Virus record (IMG/VR): IMGVR_UViG_3300031521_001337
Span: 1-64,000 of that record
Direction: 5' to 3' (one strand)
Length of the DNA: 64,000 nt
The position numbers and the translations under genes are program-made. The first letter of the stretch is position 1. The number at the start of each line of letters is the position of its first letter. Positions 1,438 to 58,971 of the stretch are shown piece by piece. The notes beneath the pieces are model-generated. The model saw only the letters and a list, made by a program, of their open reading frames with translations. It ran no database searches and was not told the DNA's origin.

Positions 1438-1592
1438 CAAATGATACGCAAAAAATCTCAAATGATACGTCGGAATTTTCAAATGATACGCTCGAGTTTG
1501 TATGAAAACAGTTAAGTTATTGTGACACAGCGAATTACAAGGTTTCCATATACTTAATATATACTTAATAATTCTATACTTAATGTGGCTGT
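1438..1592 (+). repeat. 155-bp direct repeat copy 1 (iteron origin-like)
   Basis: Matches 34327-34481 with 2 mismatches. CAAATGATACG x3 at 21-bp spacing (1438, 1459, 1480) and TATACTTAAT x3 (1549, 1560, 1575). Confidence 0.95.
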
Positions 1593-1617
1593 ATTCAACA
1601 CATAACGGACTACAAAC

Positions 1618-1651
1618 AAAAAAGGCTGCTACATAATTGTAACAGCCTTTT
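1618..1651 (-). terminator. Intrinsic terminator after 1673..2296
   Basis: aaaaaggctg...cagcctttt hairpin. Confidence 0.7.
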
Positions 1652-1672
1652 AAATTTGGATTGATTTATTGA

Positions 1673-2296
1673 TTAGTCTTCTAATTCAATATCAATACTT
1701 GTATAATCTTCTGAATCTTCTGGATCAATATCATTACAATCAGTAGAATTACTAACTAAATATTTATTAATTAGATCATATTCTTTACTACCTCTTTCGC
1801 AATCTTGACTGATTGTCAACAATTTCTTTGCATCAAGTTCAGTTATATCTTTACCGATAACCAGTTCTGCTTCACGTCTTACTACTTCTCTAACTACTAT
1901 TTTAATTGTTTTACCTTCCATAATGTTGTTTGTTGTTTGTACTGTTTGGTCGTTTTCTTTACCAAATACTAAATTAATGTCGAAAATATCACCCTCTGCT
2001 AAAGAACTATATAATGCAGGTGGCATTATATTTCTACCAGTAATAGCTTTTAAGGCACTAATAAACTCATCTGACTTTGCTATTTCGTCTAAAATAGGTT
2101 GTAATAACGCTTCTAATTTAGGTGTAAATGTATGAGTACTTGTTAAGTATGTATTACTTATCATACCAGATATCATTGCACTCATTCTAATTTTATCTGA
2201 TTCCTCAGCTAAATTTTTAAAAACCATTTGTTTGATGTTTTTCTTAAAAACATCTTCTTGTCCAATTACAAAAATTTCACCCATAATATTAAGCAT
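1673..2296 (-). CDS. Hypothetical protein
   Basis: 207-aa ORF overlapping the upstream gene and followed by a terminator. Confidence 0.7.
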   Translation of the reverse strand: MLNIMGEIFVIGQEDVFKKNIKQMVFKNLAEESDKIRMSAMISGMISNTYLTSTHTFTPKLEALLQPILDEIAKSDEFISALKAITGRNIMPPALYSSLAEGDIFDINLVFGKENDQTVQTTNNIMEGKTIKIVVREVVRREAELVIGKDITELDAKKLLTISQDCERGSKEYDLINKYLVSNSTDCNDIDPEDSEDYTSIDIELED

Positions 2297-2582
2297 TTAA
2301 AAGGTTAATAATTTCTGCCTTCTCTTCTGCACTCATAGTACTTACAGAAGTCTTTAATGCTTCAATTCTTTGTGCTTTAATTTCGGCTTCTTTTTCAGCT
2401 TTCAATGCTGTTAAATTAGCTGTCCATTTCTCACACTTTTCAAGTTGTTCATCACACCTTTTTAGTAGCTCGTCAGATGTTAATAACTTACCAAATGAAG
2501 TACCATAAGAATCTATTGATTCTTTTCTCTGACCTACTTTTTTTACTTGTGCAGCATCTGCACTTTGAATATTTTTATTCAT
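2289..2582 (-). CDS. Hypothetical coiled-coil protein
   Basis: 97-aa ORF with a Bacteroidetes-type promoter upstream (TTTG-17nt-CACCTTTG, 2625-2653). Confidence 0.7.
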   Translation of the reverse strand: MNKNIQSADAAQVKKVGQRKESIDSYGTSFGKLLTSDELLKRCDEQLEKCEKWTANLTALKAEKEAEIKAQRIEALKTSVSTMSAEEKAEIINLLNA

Positions 2583-2694
2583 TTAAATAAAGCAATCTGT
2601 TTTAGTTTGTTTGTGATTGCGATACAAAGGTGCGACAATATGAAAAGCCCAAAAGTAATGGTTAAAATGGTCTAATTTACCTACCCCGCATTAA

Positions 2695-3564
2695 TTAATG
2701 CCACATAGCAGAATATTTATTAAATCTAAAGTCTTGTGTTTTGGTTTTAAACTCTCTATAACAGGACTTTAAATGTTCATCGCCATATAACCAATCTTCA
2801 TTATTATATATACCTGTAAGATATATTAATTTTGAAATAAAAGTAAATTTATTCAAAGATGCTATTTTATCTCCATTTTTAACAGGTTTATCTACAACAT
2901 ATTGTTTAAAGAAGTCAATCATTATTTTAGTGAATAGACAAATACGTGCATAATTTGGTGCATCTTTAGAATTACTTTCTTCAAGCTTAGCAGAATTTAA
3001 AACACTACCAGTTTTTAAACCGTTCAATTCCTCATCACATAACGAAGCCATTAAATAAATCGCTGTATTATTATCTATGACAATACTTTTTTTACCAATT
3101 TTCAACGTAATAGTAGCTTTCTGTTTAAATTCAATATCATTACCATTAATTTTACCTGTTGAATTATCATCTATAGCTTTTACAAATTTTTTCATTTGAC
3201 CAGCTGGACTTTCTTTTGCAACCAAACCACCTACACAATTAGTATATGCAAAATCAAATGCAAATAACAGAAAATACCAAAACTTTTTAGAATCTATATT
3301 AAACGCTTTTAATATGAGTTGTATATTTTTATCTTCTTCATCACCATTCATATAATCATTATAAGTAAAATTGGTTTTTATTGTACCTTGATTATAATTT
3401 TGCACAAAAGTATATAATCCATTCAATGAACACATTAACATACCATTTCCTTCAGCATCAAAATCTGCATCTGGAAGGTGCGTATAAACCATATTACATA
3501 CATATTCTAATAATGGTTCTTCTTCTATACAATCGTCTATATCAAACTGATCTACTACACTCAT
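2695..3564 (-). CDS. Hypothetical protein (standard code, TGG Trp only)
   Basis: Likely start MSVVDQF; TACTTTTG -7 element at 3583-3590. Confidence 0.7.
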   Translation of the reverse strand: MSVVDQFDIDDCIEEEPLLEYVCNMVYTHLPDADFDAEGNGMLMCSLNGLYTFVQNYNQGTIKTNFTYNDYMNGDEEDKNIQLILKAFNIDSKKFWYFLLFAFDFAYTNCVGGLVAKESPAGQMKKFVKAIDDNSTGKINGNDIEFKQKATITLKIGKKSIVIDNNTAIYLMASLCDEELNGLKTGSVLNSAKLEESNSKDAPNYARICLFTKIMIDFFKQYVVDKPVKNGDKIASLNKFTFISKLIYLTGIYNNEDWLYGDEHLKSCYREFKTKTQDFRFNKYSAMWH

Positions 3565-3590
3565 AATATTGTTATTTTTTGACAAAAGTA

Positions 3591-3625
3591 AAAAAAAGTC
3601 TGTAATCAACAAAGACTACAGACTT
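3591..3625 (-). terminator. Terminator closing the lysis cassette
   Basis: Minus strand aagtctgtagtc...gattacagacttttttt. Confidence 0.7.
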
Positions 3626-3630
3626 CAATA

Positions 3631-3837
3631 TTATTTACCAATCTTTTTATATTGGTAATCTACCCCAAACAAAGCACCTGCAAAGGTGCATATTTCCCCA
3701 AAGGCTACTAAAATACTGTTATGTATAACTCCAATGGGTACTACTCAAAAACCCATAAATAAAAGGCATATCCCAGCCAACACCAATACACAAGCTACTG
3801 CTAATTGTACGTTCAATTTTGTTTCTTTCAAATTCAT
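3631..3837 (-). CDS. Small two-TM holin-like protein (1 in-frame TGA=Trp); absent from ORF track
   Basis: MNLKETKLNVQLAVACVLVLAGICLLFMGF[W]VVPIGVIHNSILVAFGEICTFAGALFGVDYQYKKIGK; resembles Bacteroidetes phage lysis-cassette membrane proteins. Confidence 0.8.
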
Positions 3838-3858
3838 TACTTACTTTTTTATTTGTTT

Positions 3859-4452
3859 CTATTTTAACACCTTTATAAATCGAAAGTCTTTTACCTCTGA
3901 ATGAGGATTTAGTTCTTTCACTTCTATAACCTGTATTGTTTGTTTTTTCTGGAACAACCTTCACAAAAAGAATTTCTTTGGTGGTTTTATTGTTTCACGC
4001 TTATCATAAGTAATTGCTATTACTTCATTTCTTACTTTCAAATCTACATTAAGCGTATCTGGTGCTTTAAATTTCAAATCTAGGCTGTACCATTCATCAC
4101 CAGTTTTAGCTTCATAATCACGAATAAACACACTGTCTTTTAATGTTACAGTATCTTTTATTTGTGTTTGGGAATTTATAAAAACCGTTTCAGTTACCTT
4201 TTTAGGTTTAAGTTTTAATTCACCTATCAACGTTTTTACTTTTAAATCAGATGAATCTTTACTATCCTTCAAATCAGCTAAAGTAAATTGATAAACTACG
4301 TTCTTTCTAACTGATGCTTTATAGTTATTGGTAGCCGTTTTTAGCTCCTCATTCAGTTGTTTTGTGTGGTTATATGAAAACCACAATAAAACCCCACAAA
4401 TCAAAGCTATTGAAGCCAGCAGTATAATTAAATATTTCTTTATTGCTATCAT
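3859..4452 (-). CDS. DUF6549-like, spanin-like lysis protein (1 TGA=Trp)
   Basis: N-terminal TM plus coiled coil; read-through gives PPKKFFL[W]RLFQKKQTIQVIEVKELNPH, ending TAG at 3859. Confidence 0.75.
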
Positions 4453-4838
4453 TACGTTTTTATTAGTTGTTTCTTATTATCACCTTCTCTATATTCTATG
4501 TGAACTCAGGCAAAATTATGTTCATCTATCAACTGTCTAAACTCAAAATGTTCTTTTATTAGCTTATAAAGTAAAGCATTATCATCACAATCTAAATCAG
4601 CACAAGTACCTAATAAATGACCAGAAGTACTTACACCACCAACCGCTTTATTTACATCTGGACTTCTAAAACCGCTGTTAATTTTAATTGGTTTACCATA
4701 CAATTCCCTCAAAGGATCTAACACATTTGTAACTAATCTTTGCAGATTAGCTACTTGTGTTTCATTAGGAATATTTACTATCTTTTTATCTGTATGAACT
4801 AGTTCTTCATACGTGAATCATTTTGATACTATTTTCAT
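4452..4838 (-). CDS. Endolysin, peptidase M15A (2 TGA=Trp)
   Basis: LDPLRELYGKPIKINSGFRS, SGHLLGTCAD; read-through restores the catalytic [W]VHIEY motif. Confidence 0.9.
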
Positions 4839-4855
4839 ATTACATTTATTTGATA

Positions 4856-5890
4856 TTATTGTAATGGTGGTTGATTTGAAACGATAGCTGAGTAAGTTTG
4901 TGACCATCCATCATTATTAAAATTCACTCTATAATAGATTGTTGAACCTACAGAAAATTTTGATATTGCACTTGATAAATCAAAATATGCTGAGCCACTT
5001 TGTACTGATGTTCCTGGACTTGTAGTATTAGCATTACAAGTAGCTGATGTGTTAGTTAGGAACTCATTAGTAGTAAAATTAGAATCTGATGCAATTTCAA
5101 ATTTGATATTTACATTATTGTTTTGAACCCTCAAATCACCTAAAATATTTAATGATGCAATTATACCCGAATTACCTGTTTTTCTATATGCAAAGAAAGT
5201 CAAATCTGTATATCTCATTGAATTTGTCCAAGGGTCTGATGGTATTACTACAGAAAAAATATAACATTCACCATCTCCATTATTAGAGATTGCATCAATA
5301 CCACTTATCCATCTTCTATCGGGTGAACTCTTATGTACAACTTTAAACCAAGCTGTTGAACCAACAGTTAAAGCACTACCACCATCGGGTGGGCTTTGTG
5401 GGTTAATTTGAAATTGAAAATATGGGTAATATCCTGTTTGGTCACTTATCATTTTTACAAAGTTTGTATGTACAAAATCATTACCATATCTATTAAAATA
5501 TACATCAAAAGTATGAGCAATTGTAACAGGTGTTTTTGTGCTCATATCTTCTTTTGCATATACTATAGGTAATCTCATATATATAGGTGAATAATAATTT
5601 ATTGAATCGCTAGTTTTATACCCATTGTTTCCAGTGAACGTTATCCAGTTGTGGTCATAATTTCTAAAAACCCCAAGCGGATAACCTTGTTTTGGGAAAA
5701 CTGTTTGATTTTCATTTTGTCTTTGATATGGTGTTTTTCCAAAGTATGCAGATTGTTCTTTATAATCGGGACTATTAAAACCATATTCATTAACTAATGA
5801 ACTCAAACACAATGTTGATACATTATGAGTATTTAAACCTAGTTCTTGCCCTACTAATGTAGTAGTAATATTTGTTGATGGTAATGCCAT
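4856..5890 (-). CDS. Tail-associated protein
   Basis: MALPSTNITTTLVGQELG N-terminus typical of genes following Bacteroidetes phage fibres. Confidence 0.6.
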   Translation of the reverse strand: MALPSTNITTTLVGQELGLNTHNVSTLCLSSLVNEYGFNSPDYKEQSAYFGKTPYQRQNENQTVFPKQGYPLGVFRNYDHNWITFTGNNGYKTSDSINYYSPIYMRLPIVYAKEDMSTKTPVTIAHTFDVYFNRYGNDFVHTNFVKMISDQTGYYPYFQFQINPQSPPDGGSALTVGSTAWFKVVHKSSPDRRWISGIDAISNNGDGECYIFSVVIPSDPWTNSMRYTDLTFFAYRKTGNSGIIASLNILGDLRVQNNNVNIKFEIASDSNFTTNEFLTNTSATCNANTTSPGTSVQSGSAYFDLSSAISKFSVGSTIYYRVNFNNDGWSQTYSAIVSNQPPLQ

Positions 5891-5891
5891 A

Positions 5892-8800
5892 TTATTTATT
5901 TTTTAAAGTATTTATTTCTTGTGTTAGTTCTTGAATTGCTCCGATTAAATATGGTATTAACTTGATATAATCAACTGATAAAAATTCATCGTTATAAATG
6001 TTATGTACTAGGTTTGGAAGTACTTCTTTTAATTGCTGAGCAATAACACCAACATCTGTTTTTTCATCCTTATTTGGGTTTAATTCTTTAGCTTTTTCAT
6101 TCCAATTATATTGCACTGGATTTAATTTATTGATTACGTCCAAAGAATTATTTAATGGTTGAATGTTTTCTTTTAACCGTTCATCAGATGCACTATAAGC
6201 TACTATTTCACCCGCTGCTATTACATTTCCATTTGAAATAAAATTACTAGCAGTAACATTACCATTGAAATGAGAATTATCACTTCCATCAATATAAAAT
6301 GGAGTTGTACCATCGGAAGCATTTCTAATTGAAAATCCAGTGTTTGAAATTCCTTGTATTGAATTTTTAATATAGTATTGCTTAACTCCTGCTTGTGAAC
6401 CTTGTAATTGTATTCTTGCCTCACCTCCAACATCATTTCTAATTAGCACAGCACTTTTGTTAATTAGAGCAATATCACCTGTTCCACTTTCAGCACTAAT
6501 ATATACTGCATTGCCAGTAAACTGTAAGTAACCTTGTCTAACTGTATTTGCTGAATTATAACCACTCAAATAAGCGGCATCAGCAATCATTTTTATTCCC
6601 TCACCTGCATAAGTATTAACAGTTCCAGTTGCCATTAAAGTACCATTCACTGCCAACTTATACCCTTGGTCAGAAATATATCCAATCCCAGTATTACCAT
6701 TAGGGCTAATATAAAACCTCCCAATATCGGGTACTGTATTAGCACTTTGGGTTGATTGAGTAGTAATTGCAAAATCTCCATAAGACTGATAATCTGTATG
6801 TATGAACCATTTCCTAGAACTACCATTAGATACATTATGGTCAAATGATAACATTCCTACCCAACCTGAACCGCTAGGCAATGATAATCTTCCGTTAATT
6901 CCCATCCCACCATTAAGAACTAATGCTCCTGTTGATGGTGATAGTGATTGAGTTGTGTTTGGTATACTTACTACTCCATTACTTTCAATAGTCAATAAGG
7001 GAGTAGTTGCATAATTAAAAGTAAAGGCTTTGTTTCCCCACTGTCCAACAGAATTAAAAATCATTGACCCATAATTATCTCCACTACTAATAAAATAGTC
7101 AAAAGAAGAACCTGAACCAAATTTTAATTTACCTGAATAATTATTAGATGGTATATTAATAGCAAAATAATCACCTCTAGCTGATGCATTTGTCCCATCA
7201 TCACTTATCAAACTATTTACAAAATTACTCCCATTCCATTTAGGAATGTAGTTTGTTGATAAACTTGATAAATCTTGTGTAGCAATATTATTTACGCCAA
7301 TAAAATTTCTAATTTGAGTACTAGTAGCAGGACTCATTCTAGCATTAGGGGCATCGTATACCATTACATAACTTACCGTAGACGCAAAATCAGCGCCATA
7401 GTATTTTAAACCATTTACCATTTCAGCATTCAAATTCCCCACCATAGTAGTAGAATTTACAGTTAATGGTGCTGTTCCAGTTGCTACTGTTGATTGTAGT
7501 TGAGTTGCATTTACTGTAGAAGTAAAAGTTACTGCTCCTGTTTTACTTAACCTAAATCTTTCTGTATAAGTATGTGCAATAGCTTCTGTATTGTATGCTC
7601 TAGCATCAGAATAATCAATTACTAAATCAGTACCACTTCCACTGTATTTGTTGGCAATTCTATAAACTCTTTGGTCAGTTCCACCATCGGCATATAAGTA
7701 CATAGCACTACCATAATCAGAATCCAATGCTCTTAATTCAACACTATGATATGTTACACCAAATTTGCCTTTTCCATACGCTGTAACATCCCCACTAATC
7801 CACATATTTGCAGATTGTGCAGAGCTATTTTGGTTTAATATGTGGTCGTTATTGTTGGTATAAGCCGATGAACCTAGACCTAACCAAGATTGTATTTGAT
7901 TTTGTGTAAAATTATAAACATATCCGTTAGAGTAACCTCCTAGTAAATTAGTAGGTACGGATTGATTAGCAGTTCCATTATATACTGTTCCTAGTGTTAT
8001 ACTAGAGCCTAAAGTCCCACTAGAAGATACAAAGTCTCCAGTGTTACTACTGGCTGCTGAACCGAATGTTCTAGTAGGTAGTGGAGTATAACCTAAAGCA
8101 GTAGTAACCATTCCTGAGTTGATACCAGTTATCCATCCACCGTAGTTACCAAGATTATTATTAAATTGACTGAGATTAGTTGGAAAATCACTAACCTGCG
8201 ACTTAGTAATGCTTATGCCAGTAGATTTATTCCATGCAATAAATATAGGGTCAGTTTCAGTAAAACTAGATAAATAGTTATGTGTATGAGTAGTTATTAG
8301 TCCAGTAAGAACTCCTTCAACTTGGGATTTAGTTATACTAGAAATATAACCACTAGGATTTGTAGAATTATAGGGAGTGTATCCTAATGCTGTAGTAACT
8401 TGAGTTCCAGTTATACCAGTAAGATATCCATATCCAGTCCAAGGAGTACCAGTAACAAATGAACCATAATTACCTAAATCATTAGTAAATTGAGATAATA
8501 ATGTAGGTTTAGAAGTTATTTCTGAATAAGCGTAGCTTGGTTTTGTAGAAGCTTTAGCTCATGAATAAACATCACTAGCTGGTAAAGTTGTAGGATAATC
8601 TGGTAAACCATATCCACTAGTTGTGGTAGGATGGCTACCTGAGTATCAATATCCAACTGATGTTCATGGAGTTCCAGAAACATATGATGTATTATCATAA
8701 GTAATAGAAGTTCCAGACATTCTAACTAGACCAGTACCATTTAATTGAGCTTGAGCTCCAATATCTAATAAAGTTAATCCATGTGGATTACCGCTATTTA

Positions 8801-29996: not shown

Positions 29997-30014
29997 ATTT
30001 ATTCTATCATTTTG

Positions 30015-30087
30015 CACCCTTGGTAAGACTCGAACTCACACTTACAAATTTTGAAGATTTGTGTGCTAACCATTACACTACAAAGGT
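30015..30087 (-). tRNA. Opal suppressor tRNA, anticodon UCA (predicted Trp-charged)
   Basis: ACCTTTG TA GTGT AATGGTTA GCAC A CAAAT CT-TCA-AA ATTTG TAAGT GTGAG TTCGAGT CTTAC CAAGGGT G; full cloverleaf with A1-U72 and G73, short variable loop. Confidence 0.93.
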
Positions 30088-35298: not shown

Positions 35299-35715
35299 CT
35301 ACGTAATTATATATTATAGTATTCAACTTAGTATAATTATGTATTACCAAATATTGAGTATAATTGTGAGCACATGGAAATGTATGAAAGGCACTTGGAT
35401 ATCATGCAATAAGTTCGAAGATGTCTTTGGACATGAACATAAAGTATATCCATACAAGATGAGATTAGAAGAATATGAGCCATTTTTCCCCATAGAATGC
35501 TATATCCAAACACGAAATGATATCATAACTAATGTGGTATTAAGATAGAGATGATTATTTAAAAAAATATTTGGGTTGATTGAGAGTAAACGAGCACTGA
35601 CAACGACTCTCAACCACTCCAAAAATAATCCCAATAATCATTCCAACCAAATTTTACATTGAAAACCCTACATATGACAAAACATATTTGGATTGATTAT
35701 GTAATATTATTAACA

Positions 35716-35794
35716 GAGTGCATATTGTAACAATTCAGTTACAATAGATTTATACAATTGGTATAAGTTTAGGTCCTACGCGATGCTCAAACTC
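35716..35794 (+). ncRNA. Candidate twister-sister-like self-cleaving RNA
   Basis: P1 GAGU/ACUC, internal loop GCAU / GCUCAA, two internal hairpins; a C^A cut at 35788 gives the same AAACUCAAAAAC leader as the hammerheads. Confidence 0.4.
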
Positions 35795-35806
35795 AAAAAC
35801 ATCATA

Positions 35807-36100
35807 ATGAAAACATCTGAAGAAAATGCTAAATTAGTTATATCATGTGTTAATAATATCATATCAAAAGAAATTGATTCTTTTAGTAAAATTGAATTAA
35901 CAAAAATTTTAAAAGAAACTAAATGTCCTTATTCGTCAAGTATATTTAATCTTCTCAAATCTTGTGAATTAATCACAAATATATCACGAGGTAAATATAT
36001 ATTTACTACAACTCAACCAATATATTATGGAATTATTCAAAAAGAACTTGATAAAGCTATGAAAATGCAACAAGTTTATAATCATAATTCTAAAAAATAA
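35807..36100 (+). CDS. Hypothetical protein (winged-HTH-like)
   Basis: Start MKTSEEN after an A-rich leader. Confidence 0.6.
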   Translation: MKTSEENAKLVISCVNNIISKEIDSFSKIELTKILKETKCPYSSSIFNLLKSCELITNISRGKYIFTTTQPIYYGIIQKELDKAMKMQQVYNHNSKK

Positions 36101-36169
36101 AACAATATATATTATTCATTTAAGTAATTTTGAACGTTGGTATTAGTCATTGTAAAATGATAACATACA

Positions 36170-36259
36170 ACTCAGCTAGAGAGAGTATAACATTGGTTTC
36201 CGATGAGATCTAGACGAAACGAGAGAATAAGAGGAAACTCTAAAACTCTCGTAAAACTC
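36170..36259 (+). ncRNA. Hammerhead ribozyme, pseudoknot type (U4C core variant)
   Basis: ACUC/GAGU hairpin; loop CUAGA pairs with loop II UCUAG; core CCGAUGA...GAAA; stem III CGAGAG/CUCUCG; GUA^ at 36253; stem I GUUU/AAAC. Confidence 0.7.
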
Positions 36260-36359
36260 AAAACACATATCACAATGAATAAAACTGTATATTTAGCATC
36301 ATCTAGTGATGCACGTCACACATTACACAAAGTTTATAAATCTTATAAACCAGGTAATA

Positions 36360-36635
36360 ATGGAAAAAATTAAGGTTGATTTCAAATCACAAACTTTAGA
36401 GATTATATCTAATATAACTGTAAAAGAGTTATTAGCTATTACAAATGCTGTTGATCTTTCAAGTTTTACAATAATTAGTTCAATAAATAAGCTTGAAATT
36501 ACAGGTGTTAGAACTGAATCTGAGAATATTATAATTCTTAAGAGTCTAGGTTATTATACAAATAAAGTAATTGCTGAAAAACTTGGATTAAGTGAACGAA
36601 CAGTTTATCGTAAACTAAAAGAATTAGGTATTTAA
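36360..36635 (+). CDS. HTH DNA-binding protein
   Basis: NKVIAEKLGLSERTVYRKLKELG. Confidence 0.7.
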   Translation: MEKIKVDFKSQTLEIISNITVKELLAITNAVDLSSFTIISSINKLEITGVRTESENIIILKSLGYYTNKVIAEKLGLSERTVYRKLKELGI

Positions 36636-36699
36636 TCACACACTTTTGAGTCTCCGAAAGCCGTAAGGTGATTAGGAGATTTATTAAACTTATTAAATT

Positions 36700-36927
36700 A
36701 TGATAATAACAATTTATCTCATTGGAATTCCGTTATTCCCATTCATTATTATGCTTTTCACAAAGTTCTTTCCAAATGTTTTAGAATGTGATGATCCTGC
36801 TGATTATGCATTGGGTTATGGAATGATGTCATTATTTTGGCCATTTGTATTATTTGTTGCATCAATAGGTATAATCTATTATAAGTTTTATCAAATGATA
36901 AATACTATAGATAAACATAAAAAGTAG
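36700..36927 (+). CDS. Small membrane protein
   Basis: Two TM segments, SLFWP motif. Confidence 0.6.
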   Translation: MIITIYLIGIPLFPFIIMLFTKFFPNVLECDDPADYALGYGMMSLFWPFVLFVASIGIIYYKFYQMINTIDKHKK

Positions 36928-37201
36928 CAATACTCTCTCATAAACATAATTGAAAAAATCATTAGATCTGATGGTTTTTAGTACGGTACAGATATCCCGG
37001 GTTCAATTATGTTTACTTTCATAAAAGACTTATGATTTGATTAACCGTCGTCCGACGGTGTTGCATACGGTGCATAATAGTCCGGAGCCTATCATGAGTC
37101 TTTTTTACAATATACATTCCTCATCAGTCTGTATTTCTTTCTAATTATCATTATTTCTATCCCAACTATATTTAGTATTACAGTGATGTAAGAACAATAT
37201 G

Positions 37202-37279
37202 ACTCAGCCTAGGAGAGTATAACATCAGTTTCTGAAGAGACTAGGACGAAACGGGGAGCTCATCACTCCCGTCAAACTC
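37202..37279 (+). ncRNA. Hammerhead ribozyme, pseudoknot type
   Basis: CUGAAGA-G...C-GAAA core; pseudoknot CCUAG/CUAGG; stem III CGGGG/UCCCG; GUC^ at 37273; stem I GUUU/AAAC. Confidence 0.88.
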
Positions 37280-37294
37280 AAAAACTTATTTATT

Positions 37295-39135
37295 ATGATA
37301 ACATTAATCATTATTTATATTATTGGATTAATATTATGTCCAATATTATTACTTGTATTAGAATATAATTTTCCTGGTAGTATGTATTTAAATAACGGTC
37401 AAAATATCGGAGCATTTTTACAACATCATTAATTTGACCAATAGGTTTAATAATAATGGCAATATTTTTATTTGATCATATTGCATCTAATATTCATAAA
37501 AATTAATCAAATGCTAAACATAATATTAATTACAATCGTTATCATTTTAATAGTGGTAATGGTTGCAATTTTAGTAGCTCTTATAGTTGATGTATTTACA
37601 TACTTTAAATTACCAAAGATATGTATATTATATGGTATTATAATACTATTATTAATTGTTAACATTGCTATTCATTTAGAAAAATCAGTTTAAAATGAAA
37701 TTAAAAATCTTTATTATTAATATTGTTGTAGCAATAGTATTAATTGTTTCTTTTACTGCATGTAATTCTCAATCAAGAAGACATGCTCCAGTATTATCAA
37801 AAACTTACACAATAACTTACAAAGGATATCTTTCTGGTAAGTTTCTAAAACGTTCTACATTCATTAGTGCTCGTACTCCAATTGAAGCTGTACAAATACT
37901 TAAAGAACAAACGTTTGTTGGATTCGATAGTATTAGTGTTAACTCAATTAGACCTAAAGAATAATGATTAAAATTATTGTTAATATTATTGTAATAGTTT
38001 TGGTTATTATTCTTTTACGAGTATTAACATCTTGTGAAGCAAGAAGTGGGCATATGCATCAAGCTACAAAACCCACAATTGCTACACAAGTTGAATCAAT
38101 AACTAAACCAAAACATAAATTGGTTTACACATATTACATCACACACATTAAATCTCGGGATAAAATCAAGGTTTATGTGTATGATGATGATATAACATCG
38201 TACGAGTATCCAATTGATAAATTTAAAATCAAATAATCATGATAATATTATTATTACTTTTATTATGTTTCGATATATTTCTAACAAGAAAATATTATAT
38301 TGAAAAAGATCTTACAGGTGTATTACTTGGAGGTTTTGCGTGTGGATTTATAATGTGTGGGATTGTACTTATGTTGTGTATTAAGTTTCACATTCCATTA
38401 CAATAATCATGGTACTATTCTTATTAATTGTTGGATATTTATTATCCATTGTTCTGTGTAGTGTCTTATATAGAATTGCATCTCCGAAGTATTTAGATAT
38501 ATTTAGTAAATATGAAGCTGAATGTGATTTTATGTGGTTTATTCCTGGAATAAATACATTAATAGTGATATTTATGATTGGATTATTATTAATTGTTTTT
38601 ATCTGTATGTTATGCGATAAACTCATAAAAAGAGTTCGCTTTAATATCCGATTTAAATGGTTAGATAATTTCATCACCAAATTTAAAAATGAAGATCTAT
38701 AATGTTAACTAAAACTCAAGCAATAGTAATTTGTTTATCACCGTTCTTAATCTTCTATTTATTTGTAGAATTGTGTGCAATGTTTATATCAATAGAATGT
38801 AAAATCAAAAAACATGACTAAAACTGAAAAAACTCTATTATACATTGCACCATGGATTATCTTTTACTTGTTAGGTTCATTTATTGGACTACAATTCAAT
38901 ATTATCAAATGGCAAGAAGAATCACGAATGGGATATGTAATGCTTTCTTTACTTATTGATTGTGGAATATTAATGTTTAAATACATAAGCTAATGGTAAT
39001 TATACTCAGTCTATGTTTAGCATTTGATATATTTATGGGATTAATATGTTTTGATAAAGAAAATCATATTATGTCGCATTTATATGCTGCCGCAGCTGGA
39101 TTTTTATTAGCTGCAATTATTGTAAATATACTTTA
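37295..39135 (+). other. Cluster of small membrane and lipoprotein genes (e.g. 37695..37964, 37964..38236, 38409..38702)
   Basis: Tightly coupled short hydrophobic ORFs; lipobox-like FTAC and LTSC. Confidence 0.6.
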
Positions 39136-39139
39136 AACT

Positions 39140-39689
39140 CTTAGCATCAAGCAACTTTCATCAGATAAACGGTTGGATATGTATATTCTCTATATAATAA
39201 CGTTATAAATAATATAATCTCTTATATAAGAAGCATATCTGAATAACTAATCAAGAAGAGATTCAGTATGGTGGTTTGATGCCTTTAAACAGTATAATAC
39301 TAACTGCAAATAAGTATAATGAAAACCTGTGCGCAATCCTCCGATGAAAGTGTGGAACTTCCGAGTGTAAGGTATAACGGCTATATGTACAAATAGCATC
39401 CATTCTGTCAATCCTTGAAGACAAATTAATAAAAGATAGGTATACTAAAACCGATGCCGTGCTAATTGCTGGTGTCAAAAACAAGCCAACGTAATATCGT
39501 CCTGAAACTGGCTATGGGAGCAAAAGGGTGAAGCTCTTTATTACGAAAGAATGCTTCCCGGTTAGATTCACCGATTTTATCGGTGATGTACCGCGAAGTA
39601 AACAATGGTTATCATATTAATTTTGATAACAAACACTAAGGGAGTACACATCGTCGCATTTGGACATATAGTGTGTACTCTCTTTTTTA
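39140..39689 (+). ncRNA. Candidate large structured ncRNA (about 550 nt)
   Basis: No credible ORF; crossing 9-bp helices 39144-52/39274-82 and 39154-62/39343-51; several hairpins; ends in a terminator. Confidence 0.55.
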
Positions 39690-39692
39690 TTA

Positions 39693-39761
39693 ACTCAACC
39701 AGTAGAGTATAAAATAGTTTCTGATGAGACTGGACGAAATATGTTTAAACATATCAAACTC
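39693..39761 (+). ncRNA. Hammerhead ribozyme, pseudoknot type
   Basis: CUGAUGA-G...C-GAAA; pseudoknot CCAGU/ACUGG; stem III hairpin UAUGUUU-AAACAUA; AUC^ at 39755. Confidence 0.9.
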
Positions 39762-39777
39762 AAAAACAAATAAGATT

Positions 39778-39954
39778 ATGTCAAAAACTAAATCAATCAT
39801 CGCCATAACAGGTAACAATGTAAAAGTAGAAATAATATCAGGTTTAACTCCAAGACAAGCAGCTTATCAAAGAAGAGAGCTTGCTACATCCGAAGAAAAC
39901 TTTGATATGTTAGGTAAAACATGTGCAATTTATCGTACTAAAACTTGTAAGTAA
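39778..39954 (+). CDS. Small hypothetical protein downstream of ribozyme
   Basis: Start MSKTKSII; the track start at 39724 falls inside the ribozyme core. Confidence 0.6.
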   Translation: MSKTKSIIAITGNNVKVEIISGLTPRQAAYQRRELATSEENFDMLGKTCAIYRTKTCK

Positions 39955-40374
39955 TGAAACTATTTAAAGCTATTGCTATTGTAATAATGTGTGTGTCAGT
40001 TGGATTATTTATCTTAACACTATTTAAATAATGCATATCACATTCGAACCCGCATTTGGAGTATTGTTGATTGTTATCGCTCATACAATAATAACCCATT
40101 TATTTAATTGGTTACATCGTGTCGTACTTAAAGAATTCGAGATTTTCGTAATATTTATAGGATTATTTCATTTTTGTGAAGTAATGTTTGTATTTGCTAT
40201 GTTAACCGGTCTTTATTTAAAGTAAACTCTTTCGAGTTTCCAAACCATAGAAATATGGGGAGGAAACTCTTTTAATCTAATTAGTGTGTAAGATAGGTAC
40301 ATTAGGTGTACGCGCTACAGTTGGTAATTCTTATAAAAGGTGCAACCTTTCACACTTATTTCAAAACTTAAAAT

Positions 40375-40683
40375 ATGAATAAAATTACATTAAATAAAAG
40401 TTATGAATGTGATATATTAATTAGAGTATATGAATCACAAAATCCAAATGTACCTGAAAGTGATCAAATTGTAGGTGAAGTTTTATTTAAAGATAAACCT
40501 CATATTAGAGCATCTGCTTGGCTTCCAAAAGGTATTGCTGAATTTATAAATTCTGAACTATTAAAAATAGAAGATAAAAATTATAATATTCATATTTCTA
40601 ATGAATTACCATATCAAGTTGGAGTTCTCACTTCATGTAAAGAAAATTTTGATTTATATATGAATAAATTATTAAATAAATAA
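40375..40683 (+). CDS. Hypothetical protein
   Basis: 102-aa ORF with A-rich leader. Confidence 0.6.
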   Translation: MNKITLNKSYECDILIRVYESQNPNVPESDQIVGEVLFKDKPHIRASAWLPKGIAEFINSELLKIEDKNYNIHISNELPYQVGVLTSCKENFDLYMNKLLNK

Positions 40684-40690
40684 AAACAAA

Positions 40691-41179
40691 ATGGATTATA
40701 TTAAACTCTTTTATTGGCTCACAGTAGTCGATGGTTTCAAACATGTACTTTTAGGAGTATTAATTATCTTCGGAATTCTTTTAGCACTCAATGTTATATT
40801 GAAGCTGGTTTCATTTATCGAAAGTGATGAAGATTTAAATGATCGTTGTAGTAAACCTTTACGTTGGATAATTCCAATATTCTCAATTTGTTTACTTGCT
40901 CATGCATTCATACCAAGTAAAAAAGATACGTTGTTAATCATTGGTGGTGGAACTGCTATGAATTATGTTACAACTGATTCAACATGTAAACAAATTCCTA
41001 AAGAACTAAGTACATTTGTTATATCCGAATTAAAAGCAATGTCTGCGGATGCTAAAACAAGCTTAGGTGTTGTCGATCAACAAAATAAATTACTTGATGA
41101 AGCCAAGAAAATGTCTTCTAAAGAACTCATTGAGAAAATGAAGAATGATACATCATTTGCTAAAATTCTCTTAAAATAA
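40691..41179 (+). CDS. Membrane protein
   Basis: LFYWLTVVD, TM helices, FIPSKKD. Confidence 0.7.
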   Translation: MDYIKLFYWLTVVDGFKHVLLGVLIIFGILLALNVILKLVSFIESDEDLNDRCSKPLRWIIPIFSICLLAHAFIPSKKDTLLIIGGGTAMNYVTTDSTCKQIPKELSTFVISELKAMSADAKTSLGVVDQQNKLLDEAKKMSSKELIEKMKNDTSFAKILLK

Positions 41180-41267
41180 TTAAGCCATAGTTAGTATTTG
41201 TAAATTTTTATTGGATTTATACAGAACATTGTGAAATGTGAAGTATATTAGTATTATTATTTGATTT

Positions 41268-41303
41268 AAACGCAGCGGTTATAACGTCCGCTGCGTTTTT
41301 ATT
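41268..41303 (+). terminator. Terminator-like hairpin directly before hammerhead
   Basis: aaacgcagcgg...ccgctgcgttttt. Confidence 0.75.
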
Positions 41304-41305
41304 CA

Positions 41306-41370
41306 CCTCATCCAGAAGAGGCTAAAAAGTTTACTGAAGAGGCTGGACGAAACACATTATGTATAAACTC
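41306..41370 (+). ncRNA. Hammerhead ribozyme, pseudoknot type
   Basis: CCUC/GAGG hairpin; pseudoknot UCCAG/CUGGA; CUGAAGA...GAAA; short stem III; GUA^ at 41363; stem I GUUUA/UAAAC. Confidence 0.82.
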
Positions 41371-41532
41371 AAAACAAATTAAAAATGGAAAAAACTATTG
41401 TATTATCCGAAGTGGTTACTAAACACAAAAAGGTTAAAGCAGGTAAAATATTAACCTCATCTCAAAATGAAAAGCAAATTATGCGTAAAGCATGGAATGC
41501 AAAGTCTGATACTTTAATATCTTACAAGTAAA

Positions 41533-53951: not shown

Positions 53952-54037
53952 TTGGATATAGCTCAGCCTGGTTAGAGCGTCGGCAGCAAGACAAAAACAT
54001 TAGCCGGAGGTCGGAGGTTCAAATCCTTTTATCCATA
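53952..54037 (+). ncRNA. tRNA-like RNA with an 18-nt anticodon loop
   Basis: Canonical D arm, T arm and acceptor; stem TCGGC/GCCGG encloses AGCAAGACAAAAACATTA. Confidence 0.75.
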
Positions 54038-58859: not shown

Positions 58860-58866
58860 ATAGAAT

Positions 58867-58907
58867 AGGGATGCTATGGGATCACGATTCTATAGCATCC
58901 TCGTTTT
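58867..58907 (+). terminator. Terminator-like hairpin directly before pistol ribozyme
   Basis: ggatgctat...atagcatcc then gtttt. Confidence 0.65.
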
Positions 58908-58908
58908 A

Positions 58909-58971
58909 ACTCCACTAAGGGAGTATAAAGTTATTAAGCTTAGTGCGTTACACAATTCGTGTAGGTTAAAC
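58909..58971 (+). ncRNA. Pistol ribozyme
   Basis: P1 ACUCC/GGAGU; loop ACUAAG pairs with CUUAGU; AUAAA; UUAAG; GCG; P3 UUACAC/GUGUAG; G^U site at 58965/58966. Confidence 0.88.

What the first reader, a model, noticed from the sequence alone, without database searches (positions are those of the whole stretch)
36170..41370. Hammerheads with a pistol-like pseudoknot scaffold and internal covariation
Each hammerhead has a one-base-pair stem II plus a 5' hairpin followed by UAA. The hairpin loop pairs with loop II. The pairing covaries across copies: CUAGA/UCUAG, CCUAG/CUAGG, CCAGU/ACUGG, UCCAG/CUGGA. The pistol at 58909 opens with the same ACUC...GAGUAUAA scaffold. Pseudoknot hammerheads resembling pistol are known, but both classes sharing one 5' module in one genome suggests core swapping. 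The 36170 copy has CCGAUGA (U4C) and may be slowed or dead.
Basis: partly seen in the sequence, partly recalled or inferred. Interest (0 to 1): 0.7.

Follow-up and report, generated by a model that had tools for sequence, protein, structure and literature searches.

The report
Known pseudoknot hammerheads plus pistol, phage
The window holds four self-cleaving hammerhead ribozymes of the already described pseudoknot type and one pistol ribozyme in a 213-kb peat phage, each placed to cut its transcript about 20 bases before a small gene; this is an ordinary membership, with a modestly interesting shared mRNA leader.

Summary
Four type-I hammerheads at 36169-36258, 37201-37278, 39692-39760 and 41305-41368 match Rfam RF03152 (RAGATH-1, the pseudoknot hammerhead). 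A pistol (RF02679) lies at 58909-58970. The hairpin-loop/loop-II pseudoknot is 5 bp in each copy. It covaries among the paralogs and among orthologs in related phages: all 5 pseudoknot pairs change on both sides and 100% of cells stay paired.

None of this is new. The class, its one-base-pair stem II, its pistol-like architecture (crystal structure 2024) and a still-functional U4C variant are all published.

Core swapping is not supported:
- The pistol stays a pistol in five relatives.
- No slot alternates between the two classes.
- The ACUC...GAGU-AUAAA module is common in both families.
- The shared GUUU/AAAC helix follows from a leader, AAACUCAAAA, that every element precedes.

The U4C copy keeps its change in two diverged lineages, so it is probably slow rather than dead.

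Most likely role (inferred): self-cleavage trims read-through or polycistronic RNA, so small-gene mRNAs begin with a 5'-OH at an unstructured A-rich leader, in a phage that lacks Shine-Dalgarno sites.

Side finding: an undescribed four-helix RNA motif (35714-35790) sits before the same leader.

The parts
36169..36258 (+). Hammerhead 1 (pseudoknot type, type I topology). The core reads CCGAUGA (U4C, 36200-36206). Pseudoknot CUAGA (36176-36180) with UCUAG (36210-36214). Long stem III with an internal loop and a GAAA tetraloop. Predicted cleavage between 36253 and 36254 (GUA|A).
   Evidence: RF03152 36.2 bits, E 0.0025 on the region. Sequence read. Ortholog set.
37201..37278 (+). Hammerhead 2. 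Core CUGAAGA. Pseudoknot CCUAG/CUAGG. Predicted cleavage between 37273 and 37274 (GUC|A).
   Evidence: RF03152 59.4 bits, above the gathering score. The ortholog in L371 has CCAAG/CUUGG, a compensatory double change.
39638..39691 (+). Strong hairpin followed by a U tract (terminator-like), directly abutting hammerhead 3.
   Evidence: MFE -20.5 kcal/mol, z -5.6.
39692..39760 (+). Hammerhead 3. Core CUGAUGA. Pseudoknot CCAGU/ACUGG. Predicted cleavage between 39755 and 39756 (AUC|A).
   Evidence: RF03152 67.6 bits. Conserved in L368-L372, L374 and L375.
41268..41304 (+). Strong hairpin followed by a U tract, directly abutting hammerhead 4.
   Evidence: MFE -18.3 kcal/mol, z -4.7.
41305..41368 (+). 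Hammerhead 4. Hairpin CCUC/GAGG. Core CUGAAGA. Pseudoknot UCCAG/CUGGA. Stem III is only 3-4 bp. Predicted cleavage between 41363 and 41364 (GUA|U).
   Evidence: RF03152 50.0 bits, E 2e-5. Orthologs in L368, L370 and L374 keep the short stem III.
58861..58908 (+). Strong hairpin followed by a U tract, directly abutting the pistol.
   Evidence: MFE -23.9 kcal/mol, z -7.1.
58909..58970 (+). Pistol ribozyme. P1 is ACUC/GAGU. The pseudoknot is 7 bp, CACUAAG with CUUAGUG. Predicted cleavage at the G-U step between 58965 and 58966.
   Evidence: RF02679 41.6 bits against a gathering score of 34.5. Conserved in L380 and L382-L385, with compensatory changes in P3.
36254..36274 (+). Leader AAACUCAAAAC..., up to the ATG of a 32-codon ORF (36275-36373). 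The same leader type follows hammerhead 2 (37274-37294, ORF 37295-37432), hammerhead 3 (39756-39777, ORF 39778-39954), hammerhead 4 (41364-41384, ORF 41385-41531) and element X (35789-35806, ORF 35807-36100).
   Evidence: Motif scan of the whole genome: all five intergenic occurrences lie at these places. ORFs.
35714..35790 (+). Element X, an undescribed conserved RNA motif. It has two covarying hairpins, an invariant UUUAG, a 3-bp hairpin GUC..GAY and then GCUY, and it ends at the same leader. In relatives it occupies hammerhead slots.
   Evidence: Six variants found. Nine pairs show double changes. No Rfam match.

Best explanation
The five elements are ordinary members of two known classes of self-cleaving ribozyme. 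Four are type-I pseudoknot hammerheads (Rfam RAGATH-1) and one is a pistol. They lie in the small-gene region of a roughly 205-213 kb phage from peat.

How each one works:
- It folds as it is transcribed.
- The 5' hairpin loop pairs with the loop of the one-base-pair stem II (P1 loop with the internal loop in the pistol), and this locks the active fold.
- The RNA cuts itself at a fixed phosphodiester 21-24 nt upstream of a start codon.
- The upstream fragment keeps the ribozyme and ends in a 2',3'-cyclic phosphate.
- The downstream mRNA starts with a 5'-OH at a conserved, unstructured, A-rich leader (AAACUCAAAA...).

Three of the five sit directly after a strong hairpin plus U tract. I therefore propose that they act on read-through or polycistronic transcripts, detaching each small-gene mRNA from upstream structure and giving it a uniform 5' end. 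That would favour Shine-Dalgarno-independent translation and may change mRNA stability.

The module shared by the hammerheads and the pistol reflects the known common architecture of the two classes, plus the need to pair with the common leader. It does not indicate a recent exchange of catalytic cores.

Shown here: class membership, anatomy, pseudoknot covariation, conservation in relatives, position relative to genes, and the shared leader.
Inferred: cleavage in vivo, and the benefit for expression.
For: Class membership:
- Rfam scores and alignments.
- Only these five scaffold elements in the genome.

Pseudoknot:
- Cognate 5-7 bp against mostly 4 bp or fewer for non-cognate loops; chance 0.005-0.02 per copy.
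- All 5 pairs covary, 100% paired, 0/500 shuffles reach the score.
- An ortholog compensatory change, CCUAG/CUAGG to CCAAG/CUUGG, and a further variant UUCCG/CGGAA.

Pistol: P3 compensatory changes across five relatives.

Position:
- ATG 21-24 nt after every predicted cut.
- In samples from other phages, 52% of ribozymes lie within 50 nt of an ORF start, against 18% of random positions.
- Hairpin plus U tract immediately 5' of hammerhead 3, hammerhead 4 and the pistol.

Leader:
- AAACUCAAAA occurs intergenically only at five gene starts in the genome.
- It is kept in relatives whatever precedes it: a hammerhead, element X, a 31-nt filler or other sequence.
- The pistol in L384/L385 releases UAACUCAAAAAAA.

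Translation context: no Shine-Dalgarno enrichment (4% against 5.6% background) and A-rich -14 to -9 positions genome-wide.

Literature:
- The pseudoknot hammerhead shares pistol's architecture but keeps the hammerhead mechanism (PMC11300833).
- Several hammerheads flank genes in prophage polycistronic RNAs and cleave in vitro and in vivo (PMC3088659).
- Different ribozyme classes co-locate, for unknown reasons (PMC10085705).
Against: - There is no transcript evidence. The public runs holding this DNA are metagenomes or RNA-labelled libraries that look like DNA, kept only as contigs, so no ends could be read.
- Before cleavage only 5 nt of the leader are paired, so cleavage is not obviously needed to free the start codon.
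- One relative (L373) has lost hammerhead 3 but keeps the gene and the leader, so the ribozyme is dispensable there.
- Promoter-like sites are no more frequent than in shuffles, so transcription units are undefined.
- The repeated leader could be carried along by duplication rather than selected.
Confidence: 0.6

Rival explanations
1. Core swapping. In this phage lineage a hammerhead and a pistol descend from one scaffold (P1/helix IV, AUAAA linker, stem I/P2, leader), and one catalytic core was replaced by the other through recombination or a few mutations.
For: - Within this clade both classes share ACUC/GAGU, AUAAA, a GUUx/xAAC closing helix and, in L384/L385, the same post-cleavage leader.
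- In other phages stem I/P2 sequences are all different.
- Having both classes in one record was not seen in 29 other sampled viral records.
- The RF03152 model weakly hits pistols, which shows how close the scaffolds are.
- An evolutionary link has been hinted at in the literature (PMC6795133).
Against: - Pseudoknot sequences, linker length, cores and stem III/P3 all differ.
- The pistol is a pistol in all five relatives, and no hammerhead slot holds a pistol.
- ACUC/GAGU is common in both families at large.
- The GUUU/AAAC helix is dictated by the leader, which is also kept behind non-ribozyme elements.
- No intermediate was found by a scaffold scan.
Confidence: 0.1
2. Cassette-boundary hitchhikers. 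The ribozyme-plus-leader units are repeated junctions of shuffled small-gene cassettes. The repeats drive gain and loss of genes by recombination, and cleavage itself brings little benefit.
For: - Relatives differ by insertions and deletions that start or end at the leader. One joint runs from 37284 to 37695.
- L379 joins element X directly to the gene that hammerhead 1 precedes in the window.
- The X27 relative has an X-like sequence before the gene of hammerhead 3.
- L373 lacks hammerhead 3.
Against: - The ribozymes keep intact cores and show compensatory changes in the pseudoknot, stem III and P3 across lineages. That indicates selection on the fold, not only on a repeat.
- The same position just before a start codon is seen for both classes in unrelated phages.
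Confidence: 0.2
3. Upstream-directed function. Cleavage mainly matures or stabilises the RNA upstream, for example the 550-nt non-coding stretch before hammerhead 3, by leaving a compact ribozyme with a cyclic-phosphate 3' end.
For: - Long, moderately structured non-coding stretches precede hammerhead 2 and hammerhead 3 (z -2.2 and -2.8).
- One of them holds a weak match to the 3' domain of RAGATH-7.
Against: - A hairpin plus U tract already lies between those stretches and the ribozymes.
- Hammerhead 1, hammerhead 4 and the pistol follow ordinary coding genes.
- The conserved partner of all the elements is the downstream leader.
Confidence: 0.1
4. Hammerhead 1 is a dead relic because of U4C.
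For: - U4 is nearly invariant in the core.
- U4C considerably lowers activity in vitro (PMC3088659).
- Two relatives have no hammerhead in this slot (L368, L379).
- This copy has the lowest Rfam score.
Against: - U4C is kept in two lineages (window/L376 and L375/L377/L378). Their stem III differs by a large indel, yet pairing, the pseudoknot and an NUH site are retained.
- A U4C viroid hammerhead still works in vivo (PMC3088659).
- Pseudoknot hammerheads are very fast, which leaves a margin (PMC11300833).
Confidence: 0.25

Closest known systems
RAGATH-1 / pseudoknot (PK) hammerhead ribozyme (Rfam RF03152; crystal structure in PMC11300833)
   Same: Type-I topology, 4-bp 5' hairpin, A-rich linker, CUGANGA...GAAA core, a single G-C pair as stem II, a 5-6 bp loop-loop pseudoknot and an NUH cleavage site. 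Two copies score above the curated threshold.
   Different: - The hairpin is ACUC/GAGU rather than the commoner AGUC/GACU.
- One copy has U4C.
- One copy has a 3-4 bp stem III.
- All four share one stem I sequence and one downstream leader.
Pistol ribozyme (Rfam RF02679)
   Same: P1 hairpin whose loop forms the pseudoknot, AUAAA linker, P2, P3 hairpin and a G-U cleavage step. It scores above threshold and P3 covaries in relatives.
   Different: - The linker is shorter than usual, 5 nt against about 8.
- P2 is imperfect in the window copy but perfect in relatives.
- The pseudoknot is 7 bp.
Multiple hammerheads flanking genes in prophage polycistronic transcripts (Perreault et al. 2011, PMC3088659)
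   Same: Several ribozymes on one strand between short genes of a phage. [quoted passage not shown]
   Different: Here all copies, and a pistol, stand before one conserved leader, three of them directly after terminator-like hairpins. The host system appears to lack Shine-Dalgarno sites.
Synthetic ribozyme insulators such as RiboJ (from my own knowledge, not checked here)
   Same: Self-cleavage just upstream of the translation start removes variable 5' context and standardises the mRNA 5' end.
   Different: Those are engineered. A natural equivalent is only inferred here.

Membership tests
Pseudoknot hammerhead (RF03152) | Conserved catalytic core CUGANGA ... GAAA with an NUH cleavage triplet | tested here: met
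   The core and GAAA are present in all four copies. The cleavage triplets are GUA, GUC, AUC and GUA. Copy 1 departs at one core position (U4C).
Pseudoknot hammerhead (RF03152) | Stem II reduced to one G-C pair, whose loop pairs with the loop of an extra 5' hairpin | tested here: met
   5-bp cognate complementarity in each copy. All five pairs covary and 100% are paired on 13 sequences.
Pseudoknot hammerhead (RF03152) | Score at or above the curated Rfam gathering threshold (56.3 bits) | tested here: inconclusive
   Two copies pass (67.6 and 59.4 bits). Two fall below (50.0 and 36.2 bits) but have E-values of 2e-5 and 0.026 on the window and full-length alignments.
Pseudoknot hammerhead (RF03152) | Site-specific self-cleavage | not testable with these tools
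   No usable transcript data. This needs in vitro transcription.
Pistol (RF02679) | P1 hairpin, pseudoknot, P2, P3 and a G-U cleavage step in the consensus arrangement, scoring above the threshold | tested here: met
   41.6 bits against 34.5, with a full-length alignment. The pseudoknot is 7 bp, chance 8e-5 to 0.002. P3 shows compensatory changes in relatives.
Pistol (RF02679) | Site-specific self-cleavage | not testable with these tools
   Same limitation as for the hammerheads.
Any Rfam family, for element X (35714-35790) | A match to a curated covariance model, including twister, twister-sister, hatchet and the RAGATH motifs | tested here: not met
   No relevant hit at E up to 10 on the 121-nt stretch, nor on relatives.

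The most novel reading that the evidence does not exclude
Element X (35714-35790) is a conserved four-helix RNA with invariant junction nucleotides. In related phages it stands exactly where a hammerhead stands, directly before the same AAACUC leader. It could be a new class of self-cleaving or otherwise processed RNA.

More broadly, the constant leader with interchangeable upstream modules would show that phage ribozymes exist to define mRNA 5' ends.
Probability: 0.12. Interest if true: 0.8.

Novelty: new member of a known kind. Interest (0 to 1): 0.33.

Why it matters
The class, its pseudoknot, its likeness to pistol and the U4C variant are all in the literature.

What may be useful is the comparative picture in this phage group:
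- Four hammerheads, a pistol and an undescribed structured motif all end at one conserved A-rich leader about 20 nt before a start codon.
- The genome has no Shine-Dalgarno sites.
- Three of the ribozymes sit right after terminator-like hairpins.

The biological role of bacterial and phage self-cleaving ribozymes is still an open question (PMC10085705). This locus offers a compact, testable case for the idea that they standardise mRNA 5' ends. It also offers a natural pair of U4/C4 hammerheads for rate comparison.

Tried and rejected
- Megablast of the region against GenBank phages found no match.
- A scan of viral contigs for GACGAAA...AAACTCAAAA gave 117 stretches. Among the 80 fetched as loci, none was a pseudoknot hammerhead.
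- A generic core-pattern scan gave 120 stretches, of which only about 22 were real pseudoknot hammerheads.
- My strict pistol pattern found 16 clean examples and missed the window's own copy, because its P2 is imperfect.
- The metagenome scan for element X returned mostly chance or coding matches. Only L421/L464, L477 and L433 were real.
- A viral scan added L551 and L576.
- Sequencing runs: DNA holders are peat metagenomes. RNA-labelled wastewater and freshwater runs hold 85-95% relatives only as contigs and look like DNA, so no cleavage ends could be read.
- The sigma-70 promoter scan was no better than shuffles (61 sites against 60), so I make no promoter claim.
- The idea that element X is a repeated phage promoter is unlikely. 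There is a single copy in the genome and its hairpins covary.
- A tRNA-like reading of element X was rejected, because there are no T-loop or D-loop signatures.
- MAFFT could not align the short-hairpin X variants structurally, so I built no covariance model.
- Weinberg et al. 2015 is not in the held library. I cite it only through papers that cite it.
- Pfam and PHROG searches of ten neighbouring ORFs gave only one helix-turn-helix protein (36360-36635) and one family of unknown function.


Full report
**What is there.** The window is the first 64 kb of a 213,486-bp IMG/VR virus record. The record has 29.6% G+C, is rated complete by CheckV, and is held by peat metagenomes.

A scan against Rfam finds four matches to RF03152, the RAGATH-1 or pseudoknot hammerhead:
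- 39692-39760: 67.6 bits.
- 37201-37278: 59.4 bits.
- 41305-41368: 50.0 bits.
- 36169-36239: 36.2 bits.

It also finds one match to RF02679 (pistol) at 58909-58970, at 41.6 bits. The weakest hammerhead match is truncated by the model. Read directly, its stem III is a 7-bp helix with an internal loop, a 4-bp extension and a GAAA tetraloop, and the element ends at 36258.

No other copy of either class exists in the genome. The rest of the genome holds a tmRNA and about 19 tRNAs but no other ribozyme family. About 2 kb near 203.3-205.3 kb was not scanned against all of Rfam. A scaffold-only scan (hairpin, UAA linker, downstream complement of the loop) returns the same five elements plus six AT-rich matches that I take to be chance.

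**Anatomy.** Each hammerhead is type I. From 5' to 3' it has:
- a 4-bp hairpin (ACUC/GAGU in three copies, CCUC/GAGG in the fourth);
- an A/C-UAA-rich linker;
- a 5-bp stem I;
- CUGANGA;
- a single G-C pair enclosing a 6-7 nt loop;
- GAAA;
- stem III;
- the cleavage nucleotide;
- the 3' strand of stem I.

Predicted cuts fall after 36253, 37273, 39755 and 41363. For the pistol the cut is at the G-U step 58965/58966. Start codons follow 21-24 nt later, at 36275, 37295, 39778, 41385 and 58990.

**Pseudoknot.**
- A 5-bp match between such short loops has a chance probability of about 0.005-0.02 per copy. The pistol's 7-bp match has 8e-5 to 0.002.
- Non-cognate loop combinations mostly reach 4 bp or fewer.
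- Relatives were fetched through the proteins encoded next to the ribozymes. They give 13 distinct hammerhead sequences.
- The ortholog of hammerhead 2 in L371 has CCAAG/CUUGG instead of CCUAG/CUAGG.
- The hammerhead in the first slot of L374 has UUCCG/CGGAA.
- On the alignment all five pseudoknot pairs change on both sides, with 100% of cells paired.
- The covariation score for the whole structure is 0.281, against 0.122 in shuffles (0/500) and at most 0.047 when partners are slid.

**What is already known.**
- The pseudoknot form was found by Breaker's group. Its crystal structure shows an architecture nearly identical to pistol's while it keeps the hammerhead mechanism, and it is faster than other hammerheads (PMC11300833).
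[quoted passage not shown] The same paper showed several hammerheads flanking genes in prophage polycistronic RNAs (PMC3088659).
- That paper also notes that a U4C variant is much slower in vitro yet sufficient in vivo.
- Different ribozyme classes are known to co-locate near the same genes, for unknown reasons (PMC10085705).
- A possible evolutionary link between pistol and hammerhead has been raised (PMC6795133).

**U4C.** CCGAUGA is present at 36200-36206. The same change occurs in L376 (identical to the window) and in L375/L377/L378. In the latter group stem III is rebuilt as a shorter helix with a GCAA loop and the cleavage nucleotide is C rather than A, yet the pseudoknot and the pairing are kept. 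L374 has a canonical core in this slot. L368 and L379 have no hammerhead there. Persistence through this divergence argues for a working, probably slower, ribozyme. Loss in other lineages shows it is dispensable.

**Context.**
- The ribozymes lie on the plus strand among many small ORFs without known families, apart from one helix-turn-helix protein.
- Hammerhead 3, hammerhead 4 and the pistol each directly follow a strong hairpin with a U tract (-18 to -24 kcal/mol, z -4.7 to -7.1).
- All four hammerheads are followed by AAACUCAAAA(A)C. In the whole genome this motif is intergenic at only five places: the four hammerheads, and 35789 before the ORF at 35807.
- The genome shows no Shine-Dalgarno enrichment (4% against 5.6% background) and has A-rich, G-poor leaders. 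From general knowledge this is typical of Bacteroidota-type translation.
- In samples of both classes from other phages, 52% lie within 50 nt of an ORF start, against 18% of random positions.

**Relatives and the slot before the leader.** Hammerheads 2, 3 and 4 are conserved in most relatives. The sequence before the leader can differ, however:
- L373 has a 31-nt filler in place of hammerhead 3.
- L368 has unrelated sequence in the first slot.
- L379, and a wastewater relative seen only as a contig end, carry a copy of the element that precedes the leader at 35789 in the window.

That element, which I call X, has six variants: the window, L374, L375, L379, L433/L576 and L551. All share AGUGCA at the 5' end, two hairpins of variable and compensating sequence, an invariant UUUAG, a 3-bp hairpin GUC..GAY, then GCUY and the leader. 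It matches no Rfam family. It also occurs in a 100-kb phage that has neither ribozyme class. Some of these slot differences can be explained by deletion between repeated leaders. I therefore treat interchangeability as suggestive only.

**Core swapping.**
- The pistol locus is a pistol in L380 and L382-L385 (70-87% identity of the neighbouring protein). P1 and the pseudoknot are unchanged, and P3 carries compensatory changes.
- No slot alternates between the classes.
- ACUC/GAGU with AUAAA is found in about 4 of 22 other pseudoknot hammerheads and in 6 of 16 other pistols.
- What is special to this clade is the similar closing helix (GUUU/AAAC against GUUA/UAAC) and, in L384/L385, the same leader after the pistol.
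- The leader is kept behind non-ribozyme elements too, and its first bases form the 3' strand of that helix. The similarity therefore follows from the leader.
- Both classes in one record were not seen in 29 other sampled viral records. The sample is small and many of its contigs are fragments.
- I rate core swapping as not excluded but unsupported.

**Mechanism.**
- Shown: membership, fold, covariation, conservation, and placement before a conserved leader.
- Inferred: co-transcriptional cleavage of read-through or polycistronic RNA, releasing small-gene mRNAs with a 5'-OH at a uniform unstructured leader. This would suit Shine-Dalgarno-independent initiation and may alter decay.
- Rivals: cassette-boundary repeats without benefit, maturation of upstream RNA, and, for copy 1, a dead relic.

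**Verdict.** The class is already known, so these are new members of a known kind. Interest is low to moderate, and it rests mainly on the shared leader and on element X.

Noticed in passing
window 35714-35790 (+); also L374:8230-8316, L375:133-220, L379:2736-2821, L433:4681-4746, L551:7677-7760 (-): Element X, an undescribed conserved RNA motif. It has two covarying hairpins and invariant junction bases (AGUGCA, UUUAG, GUC..GAY, GCUY), and it ends at the same AAACUC leader as the hammerheads. No Rfam match.
   Followed up: partly
window 40226-40374 (+); similar stem at 36647-36683: An intergenic element that is near-identical in relatives (L368, L369, L370, L373). It starts with an 8-bp stem, GAGUUUCC/GGAAACUC, around a small GNRA-type hairpin and is followed by Us. 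A second part contains UUAGGUGUACGCG, which resembles element X. It ends at a leader-like AAAACUUAAAAU before the ATG at 40375.
   Followed up: partly
window 39244-39319 (+), within the 550-nt non-coding stretch 39137-39690: A weak match to the 3' domain of RAGATH-7 (RF03159): 21.6 bits, E 0.013 on the stretch. It recurs in L374 and L368 at the homologous place. The stretch is moderately structured (z -2.8).
   Followed up: partly
window 37023-37112 (+): A G+C-richer branched structure closed by a 14-bp stem and followed by UUUUUU, about 90 nt upstream of hammerhead 2.
   Followed up: no
window 30014-30087 (-): A tRNA with anticodon UCA, which reads UGA. ARAGORN labels it SeC. It looks like a phage suppressor tRNA, so part of the genome may use UGA as a sense codon.
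   Followed up: no
window 53952-54037 (+): Rfam calls a tRNA (47.5 bits) with 18 nt where the 7-nt anticodon loop should be. ARAGORN does not call it. It may be an intron-containing or degenerate tRNA.
   Followed up: no
window about 1580-8180, and record 206886-213486: A 6.6-kb exact direct repeat between the start region and the end of the record. This is probably terminal redundancy or circular permutation, although the record is classed as linear. The first roughly 1.5 kb is not part of the repeat.
   Followed up: partly
L001:4260-4668 and L001/L002 (record about 68-89 kb): The phage encodes a tmRNA (107 bits) and about 19 tRNAs in two clusters.
   Followed up: no
G024 (record of L270), positions 23-2930: Six weak RF03152 matches (27-36 bits) lie within 3 kb. 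One coincides with a pistol (L270, about 1211), and the others were not checked. The RF03152 hammerhead model cross-hits that pistol, which shows how close the scaffolds are.
   Followed up: no
whole genome (G000): No Shine-Dalgarno enrichment upstream of 163 long ORFs (4% against 5.6% background). A is at least 50% at positions -14 to -9. This suggests a Bacteroidota-like host.
   Followed up: partly
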